Positions 1 to 63,840 of a stretch of DNA of 64,000 nt are shown piece after piece. Source of the stretch: Euprymna scolopes. Lineage: Eukaryota. Position numbers and translations under genes: made by a program. Positions within the stretch are counted from its first letter, which is position 1, and every line of letters starts with the position of its first letter. The DNA lies in the NCBI GenBank assembly GCA_053919585.1, contig CM132828.1. One strand, given 5' to 3'. The notes under the pieces are model-generated. The model was not told the origin of the DNA and did no database searches. It saw only the letters and a program-made list of their open reading frames with translations.

Positions 1-190
1 AATAAAACGTCAATAAACAAAATATTAAGTATATATTGAATATCTTTATATAATGAAAACAAGTTTGAAAATAAAACGTCAATAAACAAAATATTAAGTA
101 TATATTTAATATCTTTATGTAATGAAAACAAGTTTGAAAATAAAACGTCAATAAACAAAATATTAAGTATATATTTAATATCTTTATGTG
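1..190. repeat. AT-rich 69-bp tandem repeat (~2.7 copies visible, runs off window start)
   Basis: AATAAAACGTCAATAAACAAAATATTAAG... recurs at 1, 70 and 139. Confidence 0.9.
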
Positions 191-757: not shown

Positions 758-1835
758 TTTTTTTTTACATGGAGTTCACCGCTTATCAAGGCCCAATGGC
801 CACTCAGGGATAAGGGTTATTGTGTGTACAGTAATCAAAGGGATAGTGTAGCAATAGTATTGGAGAATTGGTAAGGGGTCATTACTTAGGGGGGGTGTTC
901 ATCAGGAATTTGTTTGTGTTGGACTTAAAGACATCCAGGTTGAAGTCGGGAGGGAAACAGGCAAGCAGAACAGAGTTCCACAGGCGTGCAGTTCTAAGAA
1001 AGAAGCTTTGTTCATGGTATCTACGTTTTGATTTAGGCACAGATAGGGAGTGGGGAAAATTATTGACGTTGGTTTCAAATAGTTAGGTGTTTTTTTAGAA
1101 AGATTGGTGAGGGGGAACCAGAGAATGGAGCTCAGACGAGCACCTGCCATGGAAATAACGATAGAACAATGACAGGCTCGCTATATCTCTTCTGTGGGAA
1201 AGACATTGCAGGGTAGAGAAAAGGGCATCCCCTACCAAGCCACGGAGTCTATTTTGTACTCTCTCAAGGCAAGATAGGCTGTTTTTAGCAGCCCCCGCCC
1301 AGATGTGGCAGCAGTACTCCATCTTTTGACGTACTTGGCTCTTATATAGATAGAGAATTGCATCATTAGTGAGATATCTTCTGGAGCGGTAGAAGGATCC
1401 CACCATTTTCCCAGCGACCTTGGCCACAGACTTGATGTATGTGTTCCATTTAAGATCAGGTGTAAAGGTCAAACCCAGGAGCTTGTCAAAGCCTGGGGTC
1501 TCCCTTAGAGGAGAGCCATCAATTTCAATTGATGCCGGATGGGGATCAGAGCGTTTATGATGTAGAGATAGGAGCTTGGTCTAAGATGCATTAAAGGTAA
1601 CCAGTCACCTCTTTCCCCACTGTACCACGCGCTCAAGATCAGAGGAGAGAGAATCAGAGAGAACATCATCATTTACGGTCTTTGATGTGTTGCCATACAT
1701 GGTCGTGTCATCAGCATAGATGTCAACGAAAGATTTTCGTATGTGTTTTGGGAGATCATTGGTGTAGATTAGGAAGAGAGTTGGGCCCAGTATGGACCCC
1801 TGAGGGACTCTAGCATTAATACTGTGGGCCTCTGA
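758..1835 (-). mobile_element. 5'-truncated CR1/L2-group LINE (RT C-terminal part, 3' UTR, A tail), degenerate
   Basis: Minus-strand peptides PQGSILGPTLFLIYTNDLP, YADDTT, MEYCCHIWAGA, RRDIASLSLFYRYFHG; T-run at 758-766 is the tail; stop at 1605; related copies at 46772, 47510 and 56606. Confidence 0.92.
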
Positions 1836-2225
1836 CCAAATATTCAAAATCACATTTTGTATTCGCTGCTCAAATAAGATCTCCTCACTATGGCTAACCC
1901 ATATTAGGTTTTTCCGAGGAATGGAGCACCTTCTCCAAGTGATGTTACCTCAAGTAACAGCACGAGAATAGATACTCCACCAGACTAGATAAATTCTTGT
2001 CCTGGAATTCGGTAAGAGCAAAAAAACAAAATAAAAGATATACTACAACATATAAAAATGGTTAATTGGGGAGAGGAAAATTATGTCTTAAACTTCTTTA
2101 TTAACTCAGTGTTTGAGAAAAAAAGAACTTAATGTATCTCATATAGAGTTCAAGTGTTAGCCCCATGTTGTGGGCCCCTTGATTTCTGAGAACTTGTAAT
2201 GATATAAAATAAAACAAAACAAAAA
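1832..2225 (+). mobile_element. Non-autonomous SINE-like element, copy 1 (5' part missing)
   Basis: Aligns by eye along its length with 53588-53990 and with the reverse complement of 62722-63130; A-rich tail abuts ZF linker sequence GTGAAAAGCCACATTCT. Confidence 0.85.
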
Positions 2226-2470
2226 GTGAAAAGCCACATTCTGGTGAAGTGACACATATGAGAACTCACACTTAGGAAAAGCCACATTCTTATAAAGTTT
2301 GTGGATATTCTTTTTCTCACAAATCAAATTTTGTTAGACATAAGAATTCACCGGTGAATTATTAATGTAACTAATGTGGATATTCTTATTTTAAAAATCG
2401 AACTTTAGTGATTCATGAGAAAAAACACACTAGTAATAAAACTATTTTCTTGCAAACCGTGTGCATAGGA
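2226..2470 (+). pseudogene. Degenerate C2H2 zinc-finger array remnant
   Basis: GAAAAGCCACATTCT (EKPHS), CATATGAGAACTCACACT (HMRTHT), TGTGGATATTCT (CGYS), with stops and indels; same codon usage as 52777-53475. Confidence 0.85.
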
Positions 2471-5857: not shown

Positions 5858-8800
5858 AGCTAAACTGTGGGCAATTGTCATTGATAAGTCTTTCACCAAA
5901 GATTTGTTTGATACAATCGATGACTTTCCTTACTAGAGAGTCCCCATAGTTTGTGGATGAAATGTTACTTTGAATAGTAATCAATGATAGGGAGGTAATT
6001 CATACCGTCAAGTCGAAAATGTCGGTAGCTAAACTGTGGGCAATTGTCATTGATAAGTCTTTCACCAAAGATTTGTTTGATACAATCGATGACTTTCCTT
6101 ACTAGAGAGTCCCCATAGTTTGTGGATGAAATGTTACTTTGAATAGTAATCAATGATAGGGAGGTAATTCATACCGTCAAGTCGAAAATGTCGGTAGCTA
6201 AACTGTGGGCAATTGTCATTGATAAGTCTTTCACCAAAGATTTGTTTGATACAATCGATGACTTTCCTTACTAGAGAGTCCCCATAGTTTGTGGATGAAA
6301 TGTTACTTTGAATAGTAATCAATGATAGGGAGGTAATTCATACCGTCAAGTCGAAAATGTCGGTAGCTAAACTGTGGGCAATTGTCATTGATAAGTCTTT
6401 CACCAAAGATTTGTTTGATACAATCGATGACTTTCCTTACTAGAGAGTCCCCATAGTTTGTGGATGAAATGTTACTTTGAATAGTAATCAATGATAGGGA
6501 GGTAATTCATACCGTCAAGTCGAAAATGTCGGTAGCTAAACTGTGGGCAATTGTCATTGATAAGTCTTTCACCAAAGATTTGTTTGATACAATCGATGAC
6601 TTTCCTTACTAGAGAGTCCCCATAGTTTGTGGATGAAATGTTACTTTGAATAGTAATCAATGATAGGGAGGTAATTCATACCGTCAAGTCGAAAATGTCG
6701 GTAGCTAAACTGTGGGCAATTGTCATTGATAAGTCTTTCACCAAAGATTTGTTTGATACAATCGATGACTTTCCTTACTAGAGAGTCCCCATAGTTTGTG
6801 GATGAAATGTTACTTTGAATAGTAATCAATGATAGGGAGGTAATTCATACCGTCAAGTCGAAAATGTCGGTAGCTAAACTGTGGGCAATTGTCATTGATA
6901 AGTCTTTCACCAAAGATTTGTTTGATACAATCGATGACTTTCCTTACTAGAGAGTCCCCCATAGTTTGTGGATGAAATGTTACTTTGAATAGTAATCAAT
7001 GATAGGGAGGTAATTCATACCGTCAAGTCGAAAATGTCGGTAGCTAAACTGTGGGCAATTGTCATTGATAAGTCTTTCACCAAAGATTTGTTTGATACAA
7101 TCGATGACTTTCCTTACTAGAGAGTCCCCATAGTTTGTGGATGAAATGTTACTTTGAATAGTAATCAATGATAGGGAGGTAATTCATACCGTCAAGTCGA
7201 AAATGTCGGTAGCTAAACTGTGGGCAATTGTCATTGATAAGTCTTTCACCAAAGATTTGTTTGATACAATCGATGACTTTCCTTACTAGAGAGTCCCCAT
7301 AGTTTGTGGATGAAATGTTACTTTGAATAGTAATCAATGATAGGGAGGTAATTCATACCGTCAAGTCGAAAATGTCGGTAGCTAAACTGTGGGCAATTGT
7401 CATTGATAAGTCTTTCACCAAAGATTTGTTTGATACAATCGATGACTTTCCTTACTAGAGTCCCCATAGTTTGTGGATGAAATGTTACTTTGAATAGTAA
7501 TCAATGATAGGGAGGTAATTCATACCGTCAAGTCGAAAATGTCGGTAGCTAAACTGTGGGCAATTGTCATTGATAAGTCTTTCACCAAAGATTTGTTTGA
7601 TACAATCGATGACTTTCCTTACTAGAGAGTCCCCATAGTTTGTGGATGAAATGTTACTTTGAATAGTAATCAATGATAGGGAGGTAATTCATACCGTCAA
7701 GTCGAAAATGTCGGTAGCTAAACTGTGGGCAATTGTCATTGATAAGTCTTTCACCAAAGATTTGTTTGATACAATCGATGACTTTCCTTACTAGAGAGTC
7801 CCCATAGTTTGTGGATGAAATGTTACTTTGAATAGTAATCAATGATAGGGAGGTAATTCATACCGTCAAGTCGAAAATGTCGGTAGCTAAACTGTGGGCA
7901 ATTGTCATTGATAAGTCTTTCACCAAAGATTTGTTTGATACAATCGATGACTTTCCTTACTAGAGAGTCCCCATAGTTTGTGGATGAAATGTTACTTTGA
8001 ATAGTAATCAATGATAGGGAGGTAATTCATACCGTCAAGTCGAAAATGTCGGTAGCTAAACTGTGGGCAATTGTCATTGATAAGTCTTTCACCAAAGATT
8101 TGTTTGATACAATCGATGACTTTCCTTACTAGAGAGTCCCCATAGTTTGTGGATGAAATGTTACTTTGAATAGTAATCAATGATAGGGAGGTAATTCATA
8201 CCGTCAAGTCGAAAATGTCGGTAGCTAAACTGTGGGCAATTGTCATTGATAAGTCTTTCACCAAAGATTTGTTTGATACAATCGATGACTTTCCTTACTA
8301 GAGAGTCCCCATAGTTTGTGGATGAAATGTTACTTTGAATAGTAATCAATGATAGGGAGGTAATTCATACCGTCAAGTCGAAAATGTCGGTAGCTAAACT
8401 GTGGGCAATTGTCATTGATAAGTCTTTCACCAAAGATTTGTTTGATACAATCGATGACTTTCCTTACTAGAGAGTCCCCATAGTTTGTGGATGAAATGTT
8501 ACTTTGAATAGTAATCAATGATAGGGAGGTAATTCATACCGTCAAGTCGAAAATGTCGGTAGCTAAACTGTGGGCAATTGTCATTGATAAGTCTTTCACC
8601 AAAGATTTGTTTGATACAATCGATGACTTTCCTTACTAGAGAGTCCCCATAGTTTGTGGATGAAATGTTACTTTGAATAGTAATCAATGATAGGGAGGTA
8701 ATTCATACCGTCAAGTCGAAAATGTCGGTAGCTAAACTGTGGGCAATTGTCATTGATAAGTCTTTCACCAAAGATTTGTTTGATACAATCGATGACTTTC

Positions 8801-52776: not shown

Positions 52777-53499
52777 ATGAATATGCAAGACAGGGGAAAG
52801 CCATATTCTTGTACAGTATGTGGATATTCTTATTCTAAAAAATCAAAATTAGTGATTAATATGAGAACTCACACTGGGGAAAAGCCACATTTTTGTGATG
52901 TATGTGGATATTCCTGTTCTGATAAATCAAAATTAGTGAGACATATGAGAACCCACACTGGGGAAAAGCCACATTCTTGTGAAGTCTGTGGATATTCGTG
53001 TTCTGATAAATCAACATTAGTGACACATACGAGAACTCACACTGGGGAAAAGCCACATTCTTGTGAAGTATGTGGATATTCTTTTTCTGTGAAATCATCG
53101 TTAGTGGTACATATGAGAACACACACTGGGGAAAAGCCACATTCGTGTAAAGTATGTGGATATTCTTATCCTCAAAAGTCAAAATTAGTGATACATATGA
53201 GAACGCACACTGGGGAAAAGCCACATTCCTGTGATGTATGTGGATATTCTTGTTCTCTTAAATCAAATTTAGTCATACATATGAGAACTCACACTGGAGA
53301 AAAGCCACATTCTTGTGAAATATGTGGATATTCTTGCTCACGAAAATCAAACTTAGTTGTACATATGAGAACTCACACCGGGGAAAAGCCACATTCTTGT
53401 GATGTATGCAGATATTCTTGTTCTGATAAATCAAATTTCGTGAGACATATGAGAACTCACACTGGGAAAAAACTAGGAGAGAACTTGAATGCCTACTAG
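52777..53499 (+). CDS. Tandem C2H2 zinc-finger protein (8 fingers, first degenerate), truncated by a SINE-like insertion; possibly a last exon or a young pseudogene
   Basis: 240-aa ORF with C-x2-C-x12-H-x3-H fingers and TGEKPH linkers; the last residues GENLNAY* come from the inserted element. Confidence 0.8.
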   Translation: MNMQDRGKPYSCTVCGYSYSKKSKLVINMRTHTGEKPHFCDVCGYSCSDKSKLVRHMRTHTGEKPHSCEVCGYSCSDKSTLVTHTRTHTGEKPHSCEVCGYSFSVKSSLVVHMRTHTGEKPHSCKVCGYSYPQKSKLVIHMRTHTGEKPHSCDVCGYSCSLKSNLVIHMRTHTGEKPHSCEICGYSCSRKSNLVVHMRTHTGEKPHSCDVCRYSCSDKSNFVRHMRTHTGKKLGENLNAY

Positions 53500-53991
53500 C
53501 CACTGTCTTCGAGTGTCTAAGGTCTCTCTGTACAGGGGTTTGTCAGAACAATCTGACATGAGGATACTTTTTAAATAGAAGTAAACTCTGATAAAATATT
53601 CAAAATCACATAGTATTCGCTGCCCAAATAAGATCTTCTCACTATGGCTACCCCACAGTATTTTCCGAGGAATGGTGCACCTTCTCCAGGTGATATTACC
53701 TCAAACAATAGCACGAAGGTAGATACTGCACCAGACTAGATAAATTCTTGTCCTGGAATCCAGTAAGACCAAGAGACCAAAATAAAGGTATACTACAATG
53801 TATAAATATGGTTAATTGGGGAGAGGAAAATTATGTTCTCAACTTCTTTATTAACTCAGCGTTTGAGAGATAAAGAACTTAAATGGAATATTTGAATATC
53901 TATGTATCTCCTATAGACTTCAAGTGTTAGCCCCAGGTTGTGGGCCCCTTGATTTCTGAGAACTTCGACTGAAGTAAAATAAAACAAAAAA
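53476..53991 (+). mobile_element. Non-autonomous SINE-like element, copy 2 (apparently full length, ~520 bp), inserted in a TGEKP linker
   Basis: Left flank CACACTGGGAAAAAACTA, right flank AAAAAAAGCCACATTCTTGT; aligns end to end with the reverse complement of 62722-63241. Confidence 0.9.
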
Positions 53992-53997
53992 GAAAAA

Positions 53998-54489
53998 AAG
54001 CCACATTCTTGTGAAGTGTGTGGATATTGTTTGTCTGGAAAAGCAAAGTTAGTTATACATGTGAGAACTCACACTGCGGAAAAGCCACATTCTTGTGAAG
54101 TGTGTAAGTATTCTTGTTCTGAAAAAGCATCTTTAATGAGATATATGAGAACTCACACTGGGGAAAAGCCATATTCTTGTGAAGCTATCAAAAATCAGGG
54201 TTAGTCACACATATTAAAACTCACACGGGGGAAAAGCCACATACTTGTAAAGTGTGTAGATATTCTTGTTCTCATAAATCAAACTTACTAATACATATGA
54301 GAAATCACAAAAACCATATTCTATGGCGAAAAACAATATGCTTGTGAAGTGTGGGAATATTCTTGTTCTCAAAAATCAATGTTAGTATTACATATGAGAA
54401 CTCACACTGGTGAAAAACCACATTGTTGTGAAATGTGTAATTATTCTAGTTCTGACAAATCAAATTTAATGAGACACATGAGAACTCAC
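53998..54489 (+). pseudogene. Continuation of the ZF array (~6 fingers) with deletions and frameshifts
   Basis: KPHSCEVCGYCLSGKAKLVIHVRTHTAEKPHSCEVC..., deletion at ~54186, ends CEMCNYSSSDKSNLMRHMRTH. Confidence 0.88.
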
Positions 54490-55077
54490 TAAGCAATAAC
54501 AACAATTGCTGGTTCTGCCACACTTAAGTAGACATCAAATTATTAAGTGGAGAACGGCTTCTAAACAATGTGACACGAAGGAGTGTGTAAATATTTCCAT
54601 GCGAAAATCTGTAAAAACTGAATATCCAATGTAGTAACAGTTGGACATAAGTTATACATCGTCCATTGTGACTACGAAATTCCTACAGCTACACACCCAG
54701 ATGATATTGATATGGTATAAGAGGGAGAAAGTAGCGAAAGTGTAAGTAAGCGTCCCTAATGATGCTGGCCTTAACAAAAGAAAATAATAAAATATCAAGG
54801 ATTTATGTATGACATGAAAAGAAACTGGAATATTAAGACGATCTTAATCATTCTGTCATTATACAAGCTACGGAACAAGAATTTTAAAAACTATCTTGCA
54901 AATATATCTGGTGAACCATGTGCAAGAGAAATACCAATAATTGCACTTAAATGGACGGTTAGCATCTTAAAAAGATCTCTCAGTTAGAGTAACAAAACTA
55001 ATGAGAGAATGTTTGGCATCTGGTGGAAGGCTCCAGTCCCAAGAAAAACAAAGTGATGAGAAAATTAGGAGATAAAA
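54489..55077 (+). mobile_element. Degenerate 5'-truncated R4/Dong-like RLE non-LTR retrotransposon inserted in a ZF linker
   Basis: LSNNNNCWFCHT (zinc knuckle start), HEGVCKYFHAKICK, VSVPNDAGLN, KIIKYQ, and NFKNYLANISGEPCAREIPIIALKWTVSILKRSLS*, which aligns with NLPKYLEAIPGRPSCNEIQIAAIKGTVSILKRALG at 63313-63440. Confidence 0.82.
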
Positions 55078-55370
55078 AAACGCATTCTTGCAAAATGTGT
55101 GTCTATTTTTTGTTCTAAATAATGAAAACTCAACATTAGAACAATTTGTGAGTATTCTCTTTTTTTTAATAATGAAAAGTTATGAAAACATATGAGAACT
55201 CAACACTGGAAAATTCATATTTTAGAACAATTTGTGAATATTCTGTTTTTTTTATAATCAAGTTCATTGATGCATATGAAAATAACACAAATAGTAAAAG
55301 ACATTTTTACAAAATATGTTTCTAGTCTTATTTGAAGAATTTGCATTTATTTATATGAGAACTTCAAACT
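55075..55370 (+). pseudogene. Highly degenerate ZF remnants after the RLE insertion
   Basis: AAAACGCATTCTTGCAAAATGTGT (K-[P]-H-S-C-K-M-C), CATATGAGAACTCAACACTGGA, TGTGAATATTCT. Confidence 0.65.
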
Positions 55371-62204: not shown

Positions 62205-62721
62205 TCGAGGAACACTCACTTCAACCAAGGTTTCAACTCTTTCTGAGTTATTTCATATAACGCTGTCAGGTTTCACAGAAGAACTTTCAAGGTAGCTGGT
62301 TGTAGAGATGACATGATCGTAATGTATGCATTCCGATCATGTCATCTCTACAACCAGCTACCTTGAAAATTAGTCATTTAAAACTGTTCTTTCAGGTTGA
62401 GGTTCCCAGGATTTGCTGCAAAATTGTTTGATTCTTAACAGATGGTCCAGTGGATGGACTTACAAACTATCGCATGTCTCATTGTGTAGTAGCAATCCCT
62501 AAAAGAACCTGACAACTTGATACTAGATGTCTCACACTTTTTAATTCCGTGTGACAGAATCTAAATTTATTGTCATTACTGAGACCAGTCATCTTCTTTA
62601 ATGCATTGGTTACAAATCCTTGTTCCTGAGAAGCCATTATAACCCTTTCCTTATCGTGATGGAGGGCTTCCCTTTTGAGCCTGTCCAAGGAAGCTTTTTT
62701 GTCTATTGTGGAAAGCTCCCA
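62205..62721 (-). mobile_element. Degenerate R4/Dong-like RLE retrotransposon fragment (zinc knuckle to start of RLE)
   Basis: IDKKASLDRLKREALHHDKERVIMASQEQGFVTN...FRFCHTELKSVRHLVSSC, RHAIVCKSIHWTIC, WEPQPERTVLND, then KPDSVI*NNSERVETLVEVSVP at ~62205-62272. Confidence 0.82.
62285..62368. repeat. 84-bp near-perfect palindrome (35-bp perfect arms)
   Basis: TTTCAAGGTAGCTGGTTGTAGAGATGACATGATCG and its exact reverse complement flank TAATGTATGCATTC. Confidence 0.95.
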
Positions 62722-63241
62722 TTTTTACTTTTTTGTTTTATTTTACTTCGGTCGAACTTCTCAGAAGTCAAAGGGCCACAACATGGAGCTAACACTTGAA
62801 CTCTATATGATACATAGATATTCGAATTTTCCCTTTAAGTTCTTTATCTCTTAAACACAGAGTAAAGAAATTGAGAACATAATTTTCCTCTCCCCAATCA
62901 AGCATTTTTATACGTTATAATATATCTTTTATTTTGGTCTCTTGGTCTTACTGGATTCCAGGACAATAAATTATCTAGTCTGGTGGAGTATCCAGCTTCA
63001 GGCTATTACTTGAGGTAATATCACCTGAAGAAGGTGCACCATTCCTCGTAAAAGCTAATCTAGGTTAGCCATAGCGAGAAGATCTTATTTGGGCAGCGAA
63101 TACAAAATGTGATTTTGAATATTTGGTCAGGGTTTACTTCTATAGAAAAAGTATCCTCATGCCAGGTTGTTCTGACAAACCCCTGAAAAGAGAGACATTA
63201 GACACTCGCGGATAGTAACTACTATGCATTCAAATTCTCTC
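62722..63241 (-). mobile_element. Non-autonomous SINE-like element, copy 3 (full length)
   Basis: Reverse complement starts GAGAGAATTTGAATGC and ends GAAGTAAAATAAAACAAAAAAG, as in copy 2. Confidence 0.9.
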
Positions 63242-63725
63242 TTTTTATTTAGTTTACTTCAGTATCTTTTAAGAGATCAAGGGCTCCCTTTTGGAGCTCA
63301 CACTTGATGCTGTTATGATTTAAATTTATATCCGAGGGCTCTTTTAAGAATAGATACTGTTCCCTTTATGGCTGCTATCTGTATTTCATTACAGCTTGGT
63401 CTTCCAGGGATTGCTTCTAAGTATTTAGGAAGATTCTTTTTTATTAACCCAGTTGCTCCTATCACAACCGGTATAATGTTTATTTCTTTCAGAGACCATG
63501 TCGTTTTTAGATCATTTTTAAGGTCCCAATATTTTGTTATCTTTTCCCGTTCAGCTCTGTTAAGGCCGAAATCATTTGGGACTGTAACATCGACAATGAA
63601 CGCAGTTCTTTCAGGCTTGTTCCATATTACAATATCTGCTTTGATGGCTTTGTTTCTTATGTATCTGCCTGCCTGTATATCTTTGTCATAGAACACGGTC
63701 ACATTTCCATTTGATGTTATTGGTG
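63242..63725 (-). mobile_element. 5'-truncated R4/Dong-like RLE non-LTR retrotransposon (open endonuclease domain, 3' UTR, A-rich tail)
   Basis: YDKDIQ...IKADIVIW...IVDVTVPND...EREKITKYWDL...IIPVVIGATG matches the PD..D..P..K..KY RLE signature; stop at 63313; tail TAAACTAAATAAAAA. Confidence 0.9.
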
Positions 63726-63840
63726 GCCAGTGTGCGTTCTCATAACGTTGATTTTCTAGAACAGGAATGTCCACAAGCTTCACAAAAATATGGCTTTTCG
63801 CCAGTGTGAGTTCTCATATGTGCCAATGAATTTGATGTTA
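63726..63840 (-). pseudogene. C2H2 zinc-finger remnant fused to the RLE element
   Basis: Minus strand CATATGAGAACTCACACTGGCGAAAAGCCATATTTTTGTGAAGCTTGTGGACAT ([18 protein letters not shown])...ATGAGAACGCACACTGGC, then LINE sequence. Confidence 0.88.

What the first reader, a model, noticed from the sequence alone, without database searches (positions are those of the whole stretch)
53921..53991. SINE-like element shares its 3' stem-loop tail with the RLE LINE
Seen: the SINE 3' end CAAGTGTTAGCCCCAGGTTGTGGGCCCCTTGATTTCTGAGAACTTCGACTGAAGTAAAATAAAACAAAAA aligns with the LINE 3' UTR (reverse complement of 63242-63306) CAAGTGTGAGCTCCAAAAGGGAGCCCTTGATCTCTTAAAAGATACTGAAGTAAACTAAATAAAAA. Both can form a CAAG/CTTG outer stem with an inner GCTCC/GGAGC or GCCC/GGGC stem, and they differ most in the loop. 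Established: SINEs and R2-derived SIDEs borrow LINE machinery through shared 3' tails. Inference: this 520-bp non-coding element is mobilised by the ZF-targeting RLE protein. I see no obvious tRNA A/B boxes at its 5' end.
Basis: partly seen in the sequence, partly recalled or inferred. Interest (0 to 1): 0.75.

Follow-up and report, generated by a model that had tools for sequence, protein, structure and literature searches.

The report
Deleted LINE copy keeping LINE's tail
A 515-base non-coding repeat in a mollusc zinc-finger gene cluster carries the same 3' RNA hairpin tail as a site-specific LINE retrotransposon and probably also that LINE's 5' leader, so it is best read as a shortened LINE that borrows the LINE's enzyme to copy itself, which is a known kind of genomic parasite.

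Summary
The last ~70 nt of the repeat (53921-53991) align with the 3' UTR of the neighbouring 5'-truncated LINE (63306-63242, minus strand): 52 of 74 columns are identical, and 0 of 1000 shuffles reach the score. Both fold into the same two-step hairpin.

Three copies lie in the window. Two are full length and one is 5'-truncated. All sit in sense orientation at the TGEKP-linker site that the LINE uses. There are no terminal inverted or long terminal repeats.

A covariance model built only from the 3' UTR hairpins of six LINE relatives from other organisms picks the three repeat tails as its top three hits in the whole window. That hairpin shows compensatory changes in 10 of 11 pairs.

The head has no tRNA, 5S or 7SL signal and no A/B boxes, so this is not a canonical SINE. 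Its first ~310 nt are collinear with an element (L003) that joins this head to the LINE's 3' coding end and tail. The L003 head in turn matches the 5' UTR of a full-length relative (L014), which starts with an HDV-like ribozyme.

Best reading: a SIDE-like, internally deleted Dong/R4-like LINE, copied in trans. Mobilisation and ribozyme activity are inferred.

The parts
53477..53991 (+). Copy A of the non-autonomous element. It is full length (~515 nt) and sits inside a C2H2 zinc-finger linker, in sense orientation.
   Evidence: Sequence read. It is 86.7% identical to copy B and 83.4% to copy C. Paralogous empty linkers skip 53466-53995 (joints). There are no terminal inverted or long terminal repeats.
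53920..53952 (+). Tail hairpin of copy A: outer stem UCAAG/CUUGA, internal loop UGUUA, inner stem GCCC/GGGC.
   Evidence: RNAfold. Top hit of covariance model R3, which was built only from LINE relatives of other organisms (E 0.009).
53953..53991 (+). A-rich 3' end of copy A, downstream of the hairpin. It shares ACTGAAGTAAA with the LINE tail.
   Evidence: Similar to the LINE tail on its own (4-9 of 2000 shuffles).
53477..53603 (+). Structured head of copy A. P1 is 53477-53482 with 53523-53528. P2 is 53485-53490 with 53598-53603 and crosses P1. A long hairpin lies at 53491-53523 and a further hairpin at 53542-53557.
   Evidence: Pair tables for copies A, B and L003 and RNAalifold. P2 has three compensatory double changes between the window copies and L003. 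No Rfam family matches.
62729..63232 (-). Copy B, full length. It is stacked directly 3' of the LINE tail and 5' of another truncated LINE.
   Evidence: Its tail hairpin at 62801-62767 is the third hit of R3.
1830..2226 (+). Copy C, 5'-truncated at about family position 100. Its 3' junction lies at a zinc-finger linker (..GTGAAAAGCCACATTC).
   Evidence: Its tail hairpin at 2148-2184 is the second hit of R3.
63242..63726 (-). 5'-truncated RLE LINE copy. The open C-terminal coding part is 63726-63316, the 3' UTR is 63312-63242 and the tail hairpin is 63307-63277. Its 5' junction follows ..CACACTGG of a zinc-finger linker.
   Evidence: It is 63% identical to the C-terminus of the full-length 1328-aa LINE in L014. 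Relatives have RVT_1 plus zf-RVT. The C-terminus aligns with the R2 endonuclease region.
62205..62722 (-). Older, decayed 5'-truncated LINE fragment (zinc knuckle plus the start of the endonuclease) that closes the stack.
   Evidence: tblastn with relatives; zf-RVT trace.
54489..55080 (+). Diverged second LINE lineage at the same kind of site. Its tail is homologous to that of L005, not to the repeat's tail.
53450..53476 (+). Upstream half of the target (..GAGAACTCACACTGGG), followed by 10 extra bases (53467-53476) before the element's 5' end.
   Evidence: empty-site joints.
53992..54015 (+). Downstream half of the target (GAAAA..GCCACATTCTTGTGAA), where the finger reading frame resumes.
   Evidence: Copies A and C and the diverged LINE have the same 3' junction.

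Best explanation
The 515-nt repeat is a non-autonomous retroelement that depends on a site-specific, R2-superfamily (Dong/R4-like) LINE with a restriction-like endonuclease.

Its 3' ~70 nt are the LINE clade's 3' UTR recognition module: a two-step hairpin plus an A-rich end. The LINE's reverse transcriptase would bind this module and use it to start target-primed reverse transcription at the nicked TGEKP-linker sequence of C2H2 zinc-finger genes.

Its 5' ~310 nt are most likely the LINE's own 5' leader. The element is therefore a short internally deleted LINE (SIDE-like), not a SINE built on a small-RNA gene. By analogy with R2, R4 and Dong, the leader would act as, or descend from, an HDV-like self-cleaving ribozyme that trims the element out of a host-gene co-transcript.

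Shown here: tail homology, the shared hairpin motif with covariation, the shared insertion site, 5' truncation, stacking, abundance, and the absence of a Pol III head.

Inferred: binding and copying by the LINE protein; descent of the head from the LINE 5' UTR (a transitive homology); ribozyme activity; co-transcription with the host gene.
For: - Tail homology: score 40 against 18.3 +/- 2.6, 0 of 1000 shuffles; 52 of 74 columns identical.
- Same fold in both tails.
- Hairpin conserved in the clade: six relatives' 3' UTRs are 98.5% paired, 10 of 11 pairs have compensatory changes, 0 of 500 shuffles reach this, and slid controls give 27-48% paired. Model R1, seeded on three relatives, found two more independently (E 1e-4 and 5e-4). 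Model R2 found L013 (E 0.002).
- Model R3 contains no window sequence, yet it ranks the three repeat tails as hits 1-3 in 128 kb searched (E 0.009, 0.026, 0.075).
- TPRT hallmarks: copy C is 5'-truncated. The 3' ends are A-rich and fixed. There are no inverted or long terminal repeats. The 5' and 3' junctions fall at the same linker positions as the LINE's. LINE>repeat>LINE and repeat>repeat stacks occur.
- Abundance: 14,574 and 30,555 contigs were laid from two DNA runs, and reads come from both RNA strands.
- Not a SINE: no tRNA, no Rfam family, no A/B boxes.
- Origin of the head: repeat positions 1-70, 72-116 and 199-309 are collinear with the L003 head (E 3e-8, 2.5e-4 and 1e-11). L003 continues into LINE coding sequence that is 82% identical to the window's LINE, and then into the LINE tail. 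L003 head positions 169-307 match the 5' UTR of the full-length relative in L014 (score 35 against 14.2 +/- 2.2, 0 of 1000).
- Ribozyme: the L014 leader begins with a CPEB3/HDV-like ribozyme match (E 3.5e-4). R4 and Dong are known to self-cleave at their 5' end (PMC3774820).
- SIDEs are defined as a LINE 5' ribozyme joined to a LINE 3' end (PMC3414825).
Against: - The window's copies do not match the L014 5' UTR directly (z 1.7, -0.3 and 0.5). The link rests on L003 as a bridge, and the two homologies overlap on only ~25 nt of L003.
- L003 could be a LINE nested inside a repeat copy rather than one composite element, because its contig ends in (TAA)n.
- No full-length LINE of the window's own genome was available, so parentage is untested.
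- About 130 nt of the repeat (positions ~310-443) match nothing.
- The head is not recognised by any Rfam ribozyme model, and its P3 hairpin is far longer than in HDV-like ribozymes.
- The neighbouring LINE's own hairpin is not found by R3, so that copy is probably not the partner.
- Many genomic copies have non-finger 3' flanks (loose ends), so the element is not confined to zinc-finger linkers.
- RNA reads show no discrete 5' end.
Confidence: 0.7

Rival explanations
1. It is a true SINE. A head of independent origin, with an unrecognised Pol III or Pol II promoter, captured the LINE's 3' tail by template switching. Its resemblance to LINE-associated heads in L003 reflects SINE/LINE chimeras or nested insertions.
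For: The repeat does not match the L014 LINE leader directly. L003 ends in a microsatellite at the contig edge, so a nested insertion cannot be excluded. The central ~130 nt have no LINE match. Tail capture is the standard way that SINEs arise.
Against: No tRNA, 5S, 7SL or snRNA similarity and no A/B boxes in three divergent versions of the head. The L003 head matches a LINE 5' UTR at z 9.6. The head shares the order of P1, P2, P3 and P4 with the L014 ribozyme leader. Another relative (L009) also fuses a leader directly to LINE 3' coding sequence.
Confidence: 0.17
2. The tail is a relic and the copies spread passively, by segmental duplication of zinc-finger arrays that already carried an insertion, not by LINE-mediated retrotransposition.
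For: The window is a tandem zinc-finger cluster. All three copies lie next to finger sequence.
Against: The copies have different flanks and different 5' ends, one of them truncated. Paralogous empty linkers exist. Tens of thousands of contigs in several organisms carry the element, many with unrelated flanks. Stacks show repeated hits on one site.
Confidence: 0.08
3. The tail resemblance is a chance match between two A-rich ends with small GC hairpins.
For: The region is short, and single-sequence folding z-scores are only -1 to -2.
Against: 0 of 1000 shuffles reach the alignment score. An independent covariance model finds the same three tails first in the whole window.
Confidence: 0.01

Closest known systems
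R2 SIDEs (short internally deleted elements) of Drosophila (Eickbush & Eickbush 2012, PMC3414825)
   Same: A non-coding element made of a LINE's 5' end joined to the LINE's 3' UTR. It inserts at the parent's specific site, has variable and truncated 5' junctions, and depends on the parent's protein.
   Different: The parent here is a Dong/R4-like lineage, not R2. The target is a protein-coding repeat (the C2H2 finger linker), not rDNA. Copy number is very high, whereas Drosophila SIDEs are rare. About 130 nt are of unknown origin. The 5' module is not a recognisable HDV-like ribozyme. Descent from the LINE leader is shown only transitively.
Stringent LINE/SINE pairs that share a 3' stem-loop (for example eel UnaL2/UnaSINE1, and tRNA-SINEs with L2/RTE tails; from my own knowledge)
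   Same: The shared 3' hairpin plus terminal repeat or A-rich end serves as the recognition element for the reverse transcriptase.
   Different: There is no small-RNA-derived Pol III head. The partner is an RLE (R2-superfamily) LINE, not an APE-type LINE.
Dong and R4 elements with 5' HDV-like ribozymes (PMC3774820)
   Same: Site-specific RLE LINEs. A relative of the window's LINE ends in (TAA)n, as Dong does (L003). Another relative starts with a CPEB3/HDV-like ribozyme match (L014).
   Different: The window's lineage inserts in zinc-finger linkers and ends in an A-rich tail. The clade assignment was not tested by phylogeny.

Membership tests
SINE (canonical) | 5' head derived from tRNA, 5S, 7SL or snRNA, with an internal Pol III promoter (A/B boxes) | tested here: not met
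   ARAGORN finds no tRNA. Rfam at E<=10 finds no small-RNA family in copy A, copy B or L003. There is no A or B box within 2 mismatches in the head.
SINE (canonical) | 3' tail shared with a partner LINE | tested here: met
SINE (canonical) | Short, non-coding, dispersed, with TPRT hallmarks | tested here: met
   No ORF of 50 aa or more lies inside copy A; the only ORF there is the host read-through. One copy is 5'-truncated. Thousands of contigs carry the element. There are no terminal inverted or long terminal repeats.
SIDE (short internally deleted LINE) | 3' end is the parent LINE's 3' UTR | tested here: met
   The hairpin belongs to the clade motif.
SIDE (short internally deleted LINE) | 5' end is the parent LINE's 5' end (ribozyme or leader) | tested here: inconclusive
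   The repeat is collinear with the L003 head. The L003 head matches the L014 LINE 5' UTR. The repeat does not match L014 directly. No full-length LINE of this genome was on hand.
SIDE (short internally deleted LINE) | Inserted at the parent's specific target site, in the same orientation | tested here: met
   The junctions of copies A and C and of the LINE copies fall at the same linker positions. Many non-finger flanks exist genome-wide.
HDV-like ribozyme (head of the repeat) | Nested double pseudoknot with the order P1, P2, P3, P1', P4, P2' | tested here: inconclusive
   P1 and the crossing P2 are present in copies A, B and L003. P2 has three compensatory double changes and P4 covaries. Only three sequences were available.
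HDV-like ribozyme (head of the repeat) | Short P3 (3 bp) with a ~7-nt L3 that abuts P1' | tested here: not met
   The hairpin between P2 and P1' is ~11 bp long in the repeat and in L003. The feature is met in the LINE relative L014.
HDV-like ribozyme (head of the repeat) | Match to a curated covariance model | tested here: not met
   There is no hit at E<=10 in the repeat or in L003. L014 6184-6264 hits CPEB3_ribozyme at E 3.5e-4 with 24 bits, which is below the gathering score of 35.
HDV-like ribozyme (head of the repeat) | Self-cleavage at the 5' end | not testable with these tools
   This needs a co-transcription/cleavage assay. The RNA reads show no pile-up of 5' ends.
RLE LINE of the R2 superfamily, Dong/R4-like (the partner) | A single ORF with reverse transcriptase, a CCHC knuckle and a C-terminal PD-(D/E)xK endonuclease | tested here: met
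   Relatives have RVT_1 plus zf-RVT. The best PDB matches are R2 proteins (E 3.5e-43). The window's C-terminus aligns with the R2 endonuclease region (E 0.13) and is 63% identical to the C-terminus of the L014 LINE.
RLE LINE of the R2 superfamily, Dong/R4-like (the partner) | Placement inside the R4/Dong clade in an RT phylogeny | not tested
   No reference sequences were on hand. The only hints are the (TAA)n end of L003 and the 5' ribozyme.

The most novel reading that the evidence does not exclude
The head is an active self-cleaving ribozyme of HDV-like topology with an unusually long P3 arm. The element would then be a minimal 'ribozyme plus hairpin' parasite. It rides on transcription of zinc-finger genes, cuts itself free, and is copied by the LINE protein back into zinc-finger linkers. 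Its bursts would have truncated and diversified C2H2 genes during their expansion in this mollusc lineage.
Probability: 0.2. Interest if true: 0.75.

Novelty: new member of a known kind. Interest (0 to 1): 0.5.

Why it matters
Non-autonomous partners of RLE-type (R2-superfamily) LINEs are known from only a few rare SIDEs in Drosophila rDNA. Here a SIDE-like element of a Dong/R4-like lineage is abundant in several mollusc data sets, and in this window it sits in the linkers of C2H2 zinc-finger genes.

The finding gives a compact, testable RNA toolkit: a ~35-nt hairpin with clear covariation as the probable recognition site for the reverse transcriptase, and a structured 5' module that may be a divergent ribozyme. 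Both are of interest for the biology of site-specific retrotransposons and for the current use of R2-type enzymes in gene insertion.

It also bears on the reported coincidence of SINE bursts with zinc-finger gene expansion in octopus (reviewed in PMC12988792). I did not establish that this genome is an octopus.

Tried and rejected
1. Homology beyond the tail. A MAFFT alignment suggested that the repeat also keeps the end of the LINE ORF and part of the endonuclease coding region. Anchored and local alignments with shuffles show no signal (p 0.2-0.8), so I rejected this.
2. Antisense LINE fragment. tblastn gave an antisense match of copy A 315-232 to the LINE motif IPVVxGATGLxKKNL (E 4e-4; 1 of 300 shuffles). 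It is not reproduced in copies B and C or in L003. I treat it as chance.
3. Covariance models for the neighbouring LINE's tail. R1, R2 and R3 never list it. The link between the repeat tail and that LINE copy therefore rests on sequence alignment. The link to the clade rests on the models.
4. RNAalifold on a MAFFT alignment of the four window tails misaligned the inner stem and showed no compensatory pair. With only three near-identical repeat tails plus one LINE tail, the window alone cannot give covariation.
5. A metagenome scan with a conserved head pattern returned one chance match, L012.
6. A full-text search for four diagnostic 14-18-mers found no paper.
7. A word search with P0002 found many marine-metagenome relatives but no named mollusc protein and no full-length LINE of the window's own genome.
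8. Rfam on the second leader type (L013 2600-3000) found nothing.
9. Searching this scan's earlier findings by sequence and by words gave no further copies.

Full report
**What is there**

The repeat occurs three times.
- Copy A is 53477-53991 (+).
- Copy B is 63232-62729 (-).
- Copy C is 1830-2226 (+). It starts about 100 nt into the family sequence, so it is 5'-truncated.
- Copies A and B are 86.7% identical; A and C are 83.4% identical.
- None has terminal inverted repeats or long terminal repeats.
- None holds an ORF of its own.

**The tail**

The LINE copy next door (63726-63242, minus strand) is 5'-truncated. Its C-terminal 137 codons are open and are followed by a 70-nt 3' UTR.
- Its 3' UTR aligns with the last ~70 nt of the repeat: 52 of 74 columns are identical.
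- The local score is 40 against 18.3 +/- 2.6 for dinucleotide shuffles, and 0 of 1000 shuffles reach it. The match runs to the 3' terminus of both elements.
- The homology begins at the hairpin. The 50 nt upstream are unrelated, while the A-rich stretch downstream is similar on its own.
- Both tails fold into the same two-step hairpin. The inner stem carries one compensatory C-G/U-A difference, and the loop diverges most.

**Is the hairpin a real RNA element?**

The window alone cannot say, so I fetched relatives of the LINE protein.
- The C-terminal fragment has 2690 relatives in the large protein library. The full-length ones (~1100 aa) carry RVT_1 and the zf-RVT knuckle.
- Their best solved relatives are R2 proteins.
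- The window's fragment aligns with the R2 endonuclease region.
- Contigs that encode nine close relatives (L001, L002, L005-L007, L009, L011, L013, L014; marine metagenome assemblies) all have, just after the stop codon, a hairpin of the same architecture but with different stem sequences. The architecture is an outer stem of 5-7 bp, a 5' internal loop that often reads UGUUW, a GC-rich inner stem of 5 bp, a loop of 5-7 nt and a 3' bulge of 1-3 nt rich in C.
- A covariance model seeded on three of them found two more (E 1e-4 and 5e-4). The next model found L013 (E 0.002).
- On the six-sequence alignment, 98.5% of cells pair and 10 of 11 pairs show compensatory changes. No shuffle of 500 reaches this, and slid controls fall to 27-48% paired. 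The alignment was fitted to the model, which favours the structure.
- The model built from these six contains no window sequence. Scanned over both strands of the whole window with filters off, it lists the three repeat tails as hits 1, 2 and 3 (E 0.009, 0.026, 0.075).
- It does not list the hairpin of the neighbouring LINE copy. The repeat therefore carries the canonical form of the clade's 3' UTR hairpin, closest to L013's. The adjacent LINE copy is probably not its exact partner.

**Signs of LINE-type copying**

- Copy A interrupts a finger linker..CACACTGGG, then 10 extra bases, the element, then GAAAA..GCCACATTC.
- Copy C and the diverged LINE at 54489-55080 have the same 3' junction.
- The LINE copy at 63726 has the same 5' junction..CACACTGG.
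- All lie in the sense orientation of the fingers.
- On the minus strand the order is finger > LINE > copy B > older LINE fragment, with no target sequence in between.
- Public contigs also show repeat-to-repeat head-to-tail joints, and finger linkers without the insertion that skip 53466-53995.
- The family is very abundant. 14,574 and 30,555 contigs from two DNA runs lay on the 751-nt stretch, from several coded organisms and from libraries labelled mollusc or invertebrate.
- Many copies have 3' flanks that are not finger sequence (loose ends), so the element is not confined to finger linkers.
- In a poly(A) RNA run, reads cover the repeat on both strands and show no discrete 5' end.
- Relatives from other organisms are also joined to C2H2 finger sequence: L001 and L013 at the 5' junction, L005 and L011 at the 3' junction.

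**What the head is**

- It is not derived from a small RNA gene. There is no tRNA. There is no Rfam family at E<=10 in copy A, copy B or the related L003. There are no A/B boxes. The element therefore fails the definition of a SINE.
- L003/L004 are two assembly contigs from different runs that hold a related element.
  - Its first ~395 nt are collinear with repeat positions 1-309 (E 3e-8, 2.5e-4 and 1e-11).
  - It then continues into 320 nt of LINE coding sequence that is 82% identical to the window's LINE.
  - It then has the LINE tail, with the hairpin partly deleted, and ends in (TAA)n, the end typical of Dong.
- L014 holds a stack of LINE copies. One is full length, with a 1328-aa ORF containing RVT_1, and its C-terminus is 63% identical to the window's LINE.
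- Positions 169-307 of the L003 head match the L014 5' UTR just upstream of the ORF (score 35 against 14.2 +/- 2.2, 0 of 1000).
- That leader begins with a match to the CPEB3 (HDV-like) ribozyme model at 6184-6264 (E 3.5e-4, 24 bits, below the gathering score of 35). By hand I read P1 GGAGAU/GUCUCU, P2 UGUAGGAA/UUCCUACA, P3 ACG/CGU, L3 UUCACGU and P4 CUUGU/ACAAG.
- HDV-like ribozymes that cleave at the element's 5' end are documented for R4 and Dong (PMC3774820).
- L009 shows a second case of a leader fused directly to the last ~137 LINE codons. The same leader follows a LINE tail in L013.
- Internal-deletion derivatives therefore seem to recur in this clade.

**Caveats on the head**

- The window's copies do not match the L014 leader directly. 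The chain repeat - L003 - L014 overlaps on only ~25 nt of L003.
- L003 could be a LINE nested inside a repeat copy, because its contig ends in the microsatellite.
- The repeat's head has the same order of helices as the L014 ribozyme.
  - P1 pairs the very 5' end, GAGAGA, with UCUCUC.
  - A crossing P2 shows three compensatory double changes between the window copies (UUGAAU/AUUCAA) and L003 (UGGGAA/UUCCCA).
  - P4 also covaries.
- However, its P3 arm is ~11 bp instead of 3. This is not what HDV-like ribozymes look like, and no curated model recognises it. I therefore call the head a candidate processing module, not a ribozyme.

**Mechanism proposed**

1. The element is transcribed, plausibly as part of a host transcript. 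This is inferred.
2. The 5' module defines or trims the 5' end. This is inferred. Four independent loci share the same 5' terminus, (G)AGAGAA: copy A, copy B, L003 and a dominant expressed copy.
3. The LINE's protein binds the 3' hairpin, nicks the linker sequence and primes reverse transcription on the A-rich end. This is inferred from R2-type biochemistry and from the shared tail, site and truncation shown here.

**Comparison and novelty**

Tail sharing between LINEs and their non-autonomous partners is textbook knowledge. SIDEs are described for R2 and R1 in Drosophila as rare elements (PMC3414825). What is new here is:
- the parent lineage, which is Dong/R4-like;
- the abundance;
- the protein-coding target;
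- the divergent 5' module.

I rate this a new member of a known kind, of moderate interest.

No other DNA in the scan carries a note of it.

Noticed in passing
L014:6184-6264: The 5' leader of a full-length LINE relative (63% identical to the window's LINE in the endonuclease domain) matches the Rfam CPEB3 (HDV-like) ribozyme model at E 3.5e-4 (24 bits, below the gathering score). P1, P2, P3/L3 (UUCACGU) and P4 can be read by hand.
   Followed up: partly
window 53477-53603 (also 63232-63100 minus strand; L003:620-785): The repeat's head forms a pseudoknot-type pair of helices. The 5' end GAGAGA pairs with UCUCUC, and a crossing helix has three compensatory double changes between the window copies and L003. 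There are also two covarying hairpins. No Rfam family matches.
   Followed up: partly
L009:590-975 (same in L010) and L013:2651-2720: A different leader (GGGGGGTATGCAGTTCCTACAGGGCA..) is fused directly to the last ~137 LINE codons and the tail in L009. The same leader follows a LINE tail in L013. This looks like a second, independent internally deleted LINE.
   Followed up: partly
L001:1-65; L005:480-517; L011:2470-2560; L013:230-320: LINE relatives from marine metagenome assemblies are also joined to C2H2 zinc-finger coding sequence at their 5' or 3' junctions. Finger-linker targeting therefore seems to be a property of the clade, not of this genome alone.
   Followed up: partly
L003:1340-1395: A close relative of the window's LINE tail ends in (TAA)n, the target and end typical of Dong. 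Its hairpin is partly deleted. This hints at a switch of target from TAA repeats to the finger linker within one lineage.
   Followed up: no
window 53957-53971 versus 53450-53464: The repeat's tail contains TGAGAACTTCGACTG, which is 12/15 identical to the upstream half of its target (TGAGAACTCACACTG). The shared tail motif ACTGAAGTAAA resembles the linker ACTGGGGAAAAG. This is either mimicry of the target or chance.
   Followed up: no
window 52777-53499: A 240-codon open frame of zinc fingers runs into copy A and stops 23 nt inside it. The fingers downstream of the insertion are decayed.
   Followed up: partly
window 53467-53476: Ten extra bases (aaaaaactag) lie between the finger half-site and the 5' end of copy A. 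Part of this string (AAACTA) recurs in the LINE tail. It may be untemplated filler or a remnant of a very short earlier insertion.
   Followed up: no
window 62282-62371: Inverted repeat with 90-nt arms (93% complementary) inside the older LINE fragment. It looks like a small nested hairpin-type insertion.
   Followed up: no
window 53478 (RNA run X22): 83 RNA reads share one non-finger sequence directly before the repeat's 5' end (..CACACAACCAAACCCAT). One copy outside the finger genes therefore dominates the poly(A) RNA signal.
   Followed up: no
window 1-190 and 361-448: About three tandem copies of a ~60-nt AT-rich unit lie at the window's start, and a long (TA)n run lies at 361-448.
   Followed up: no
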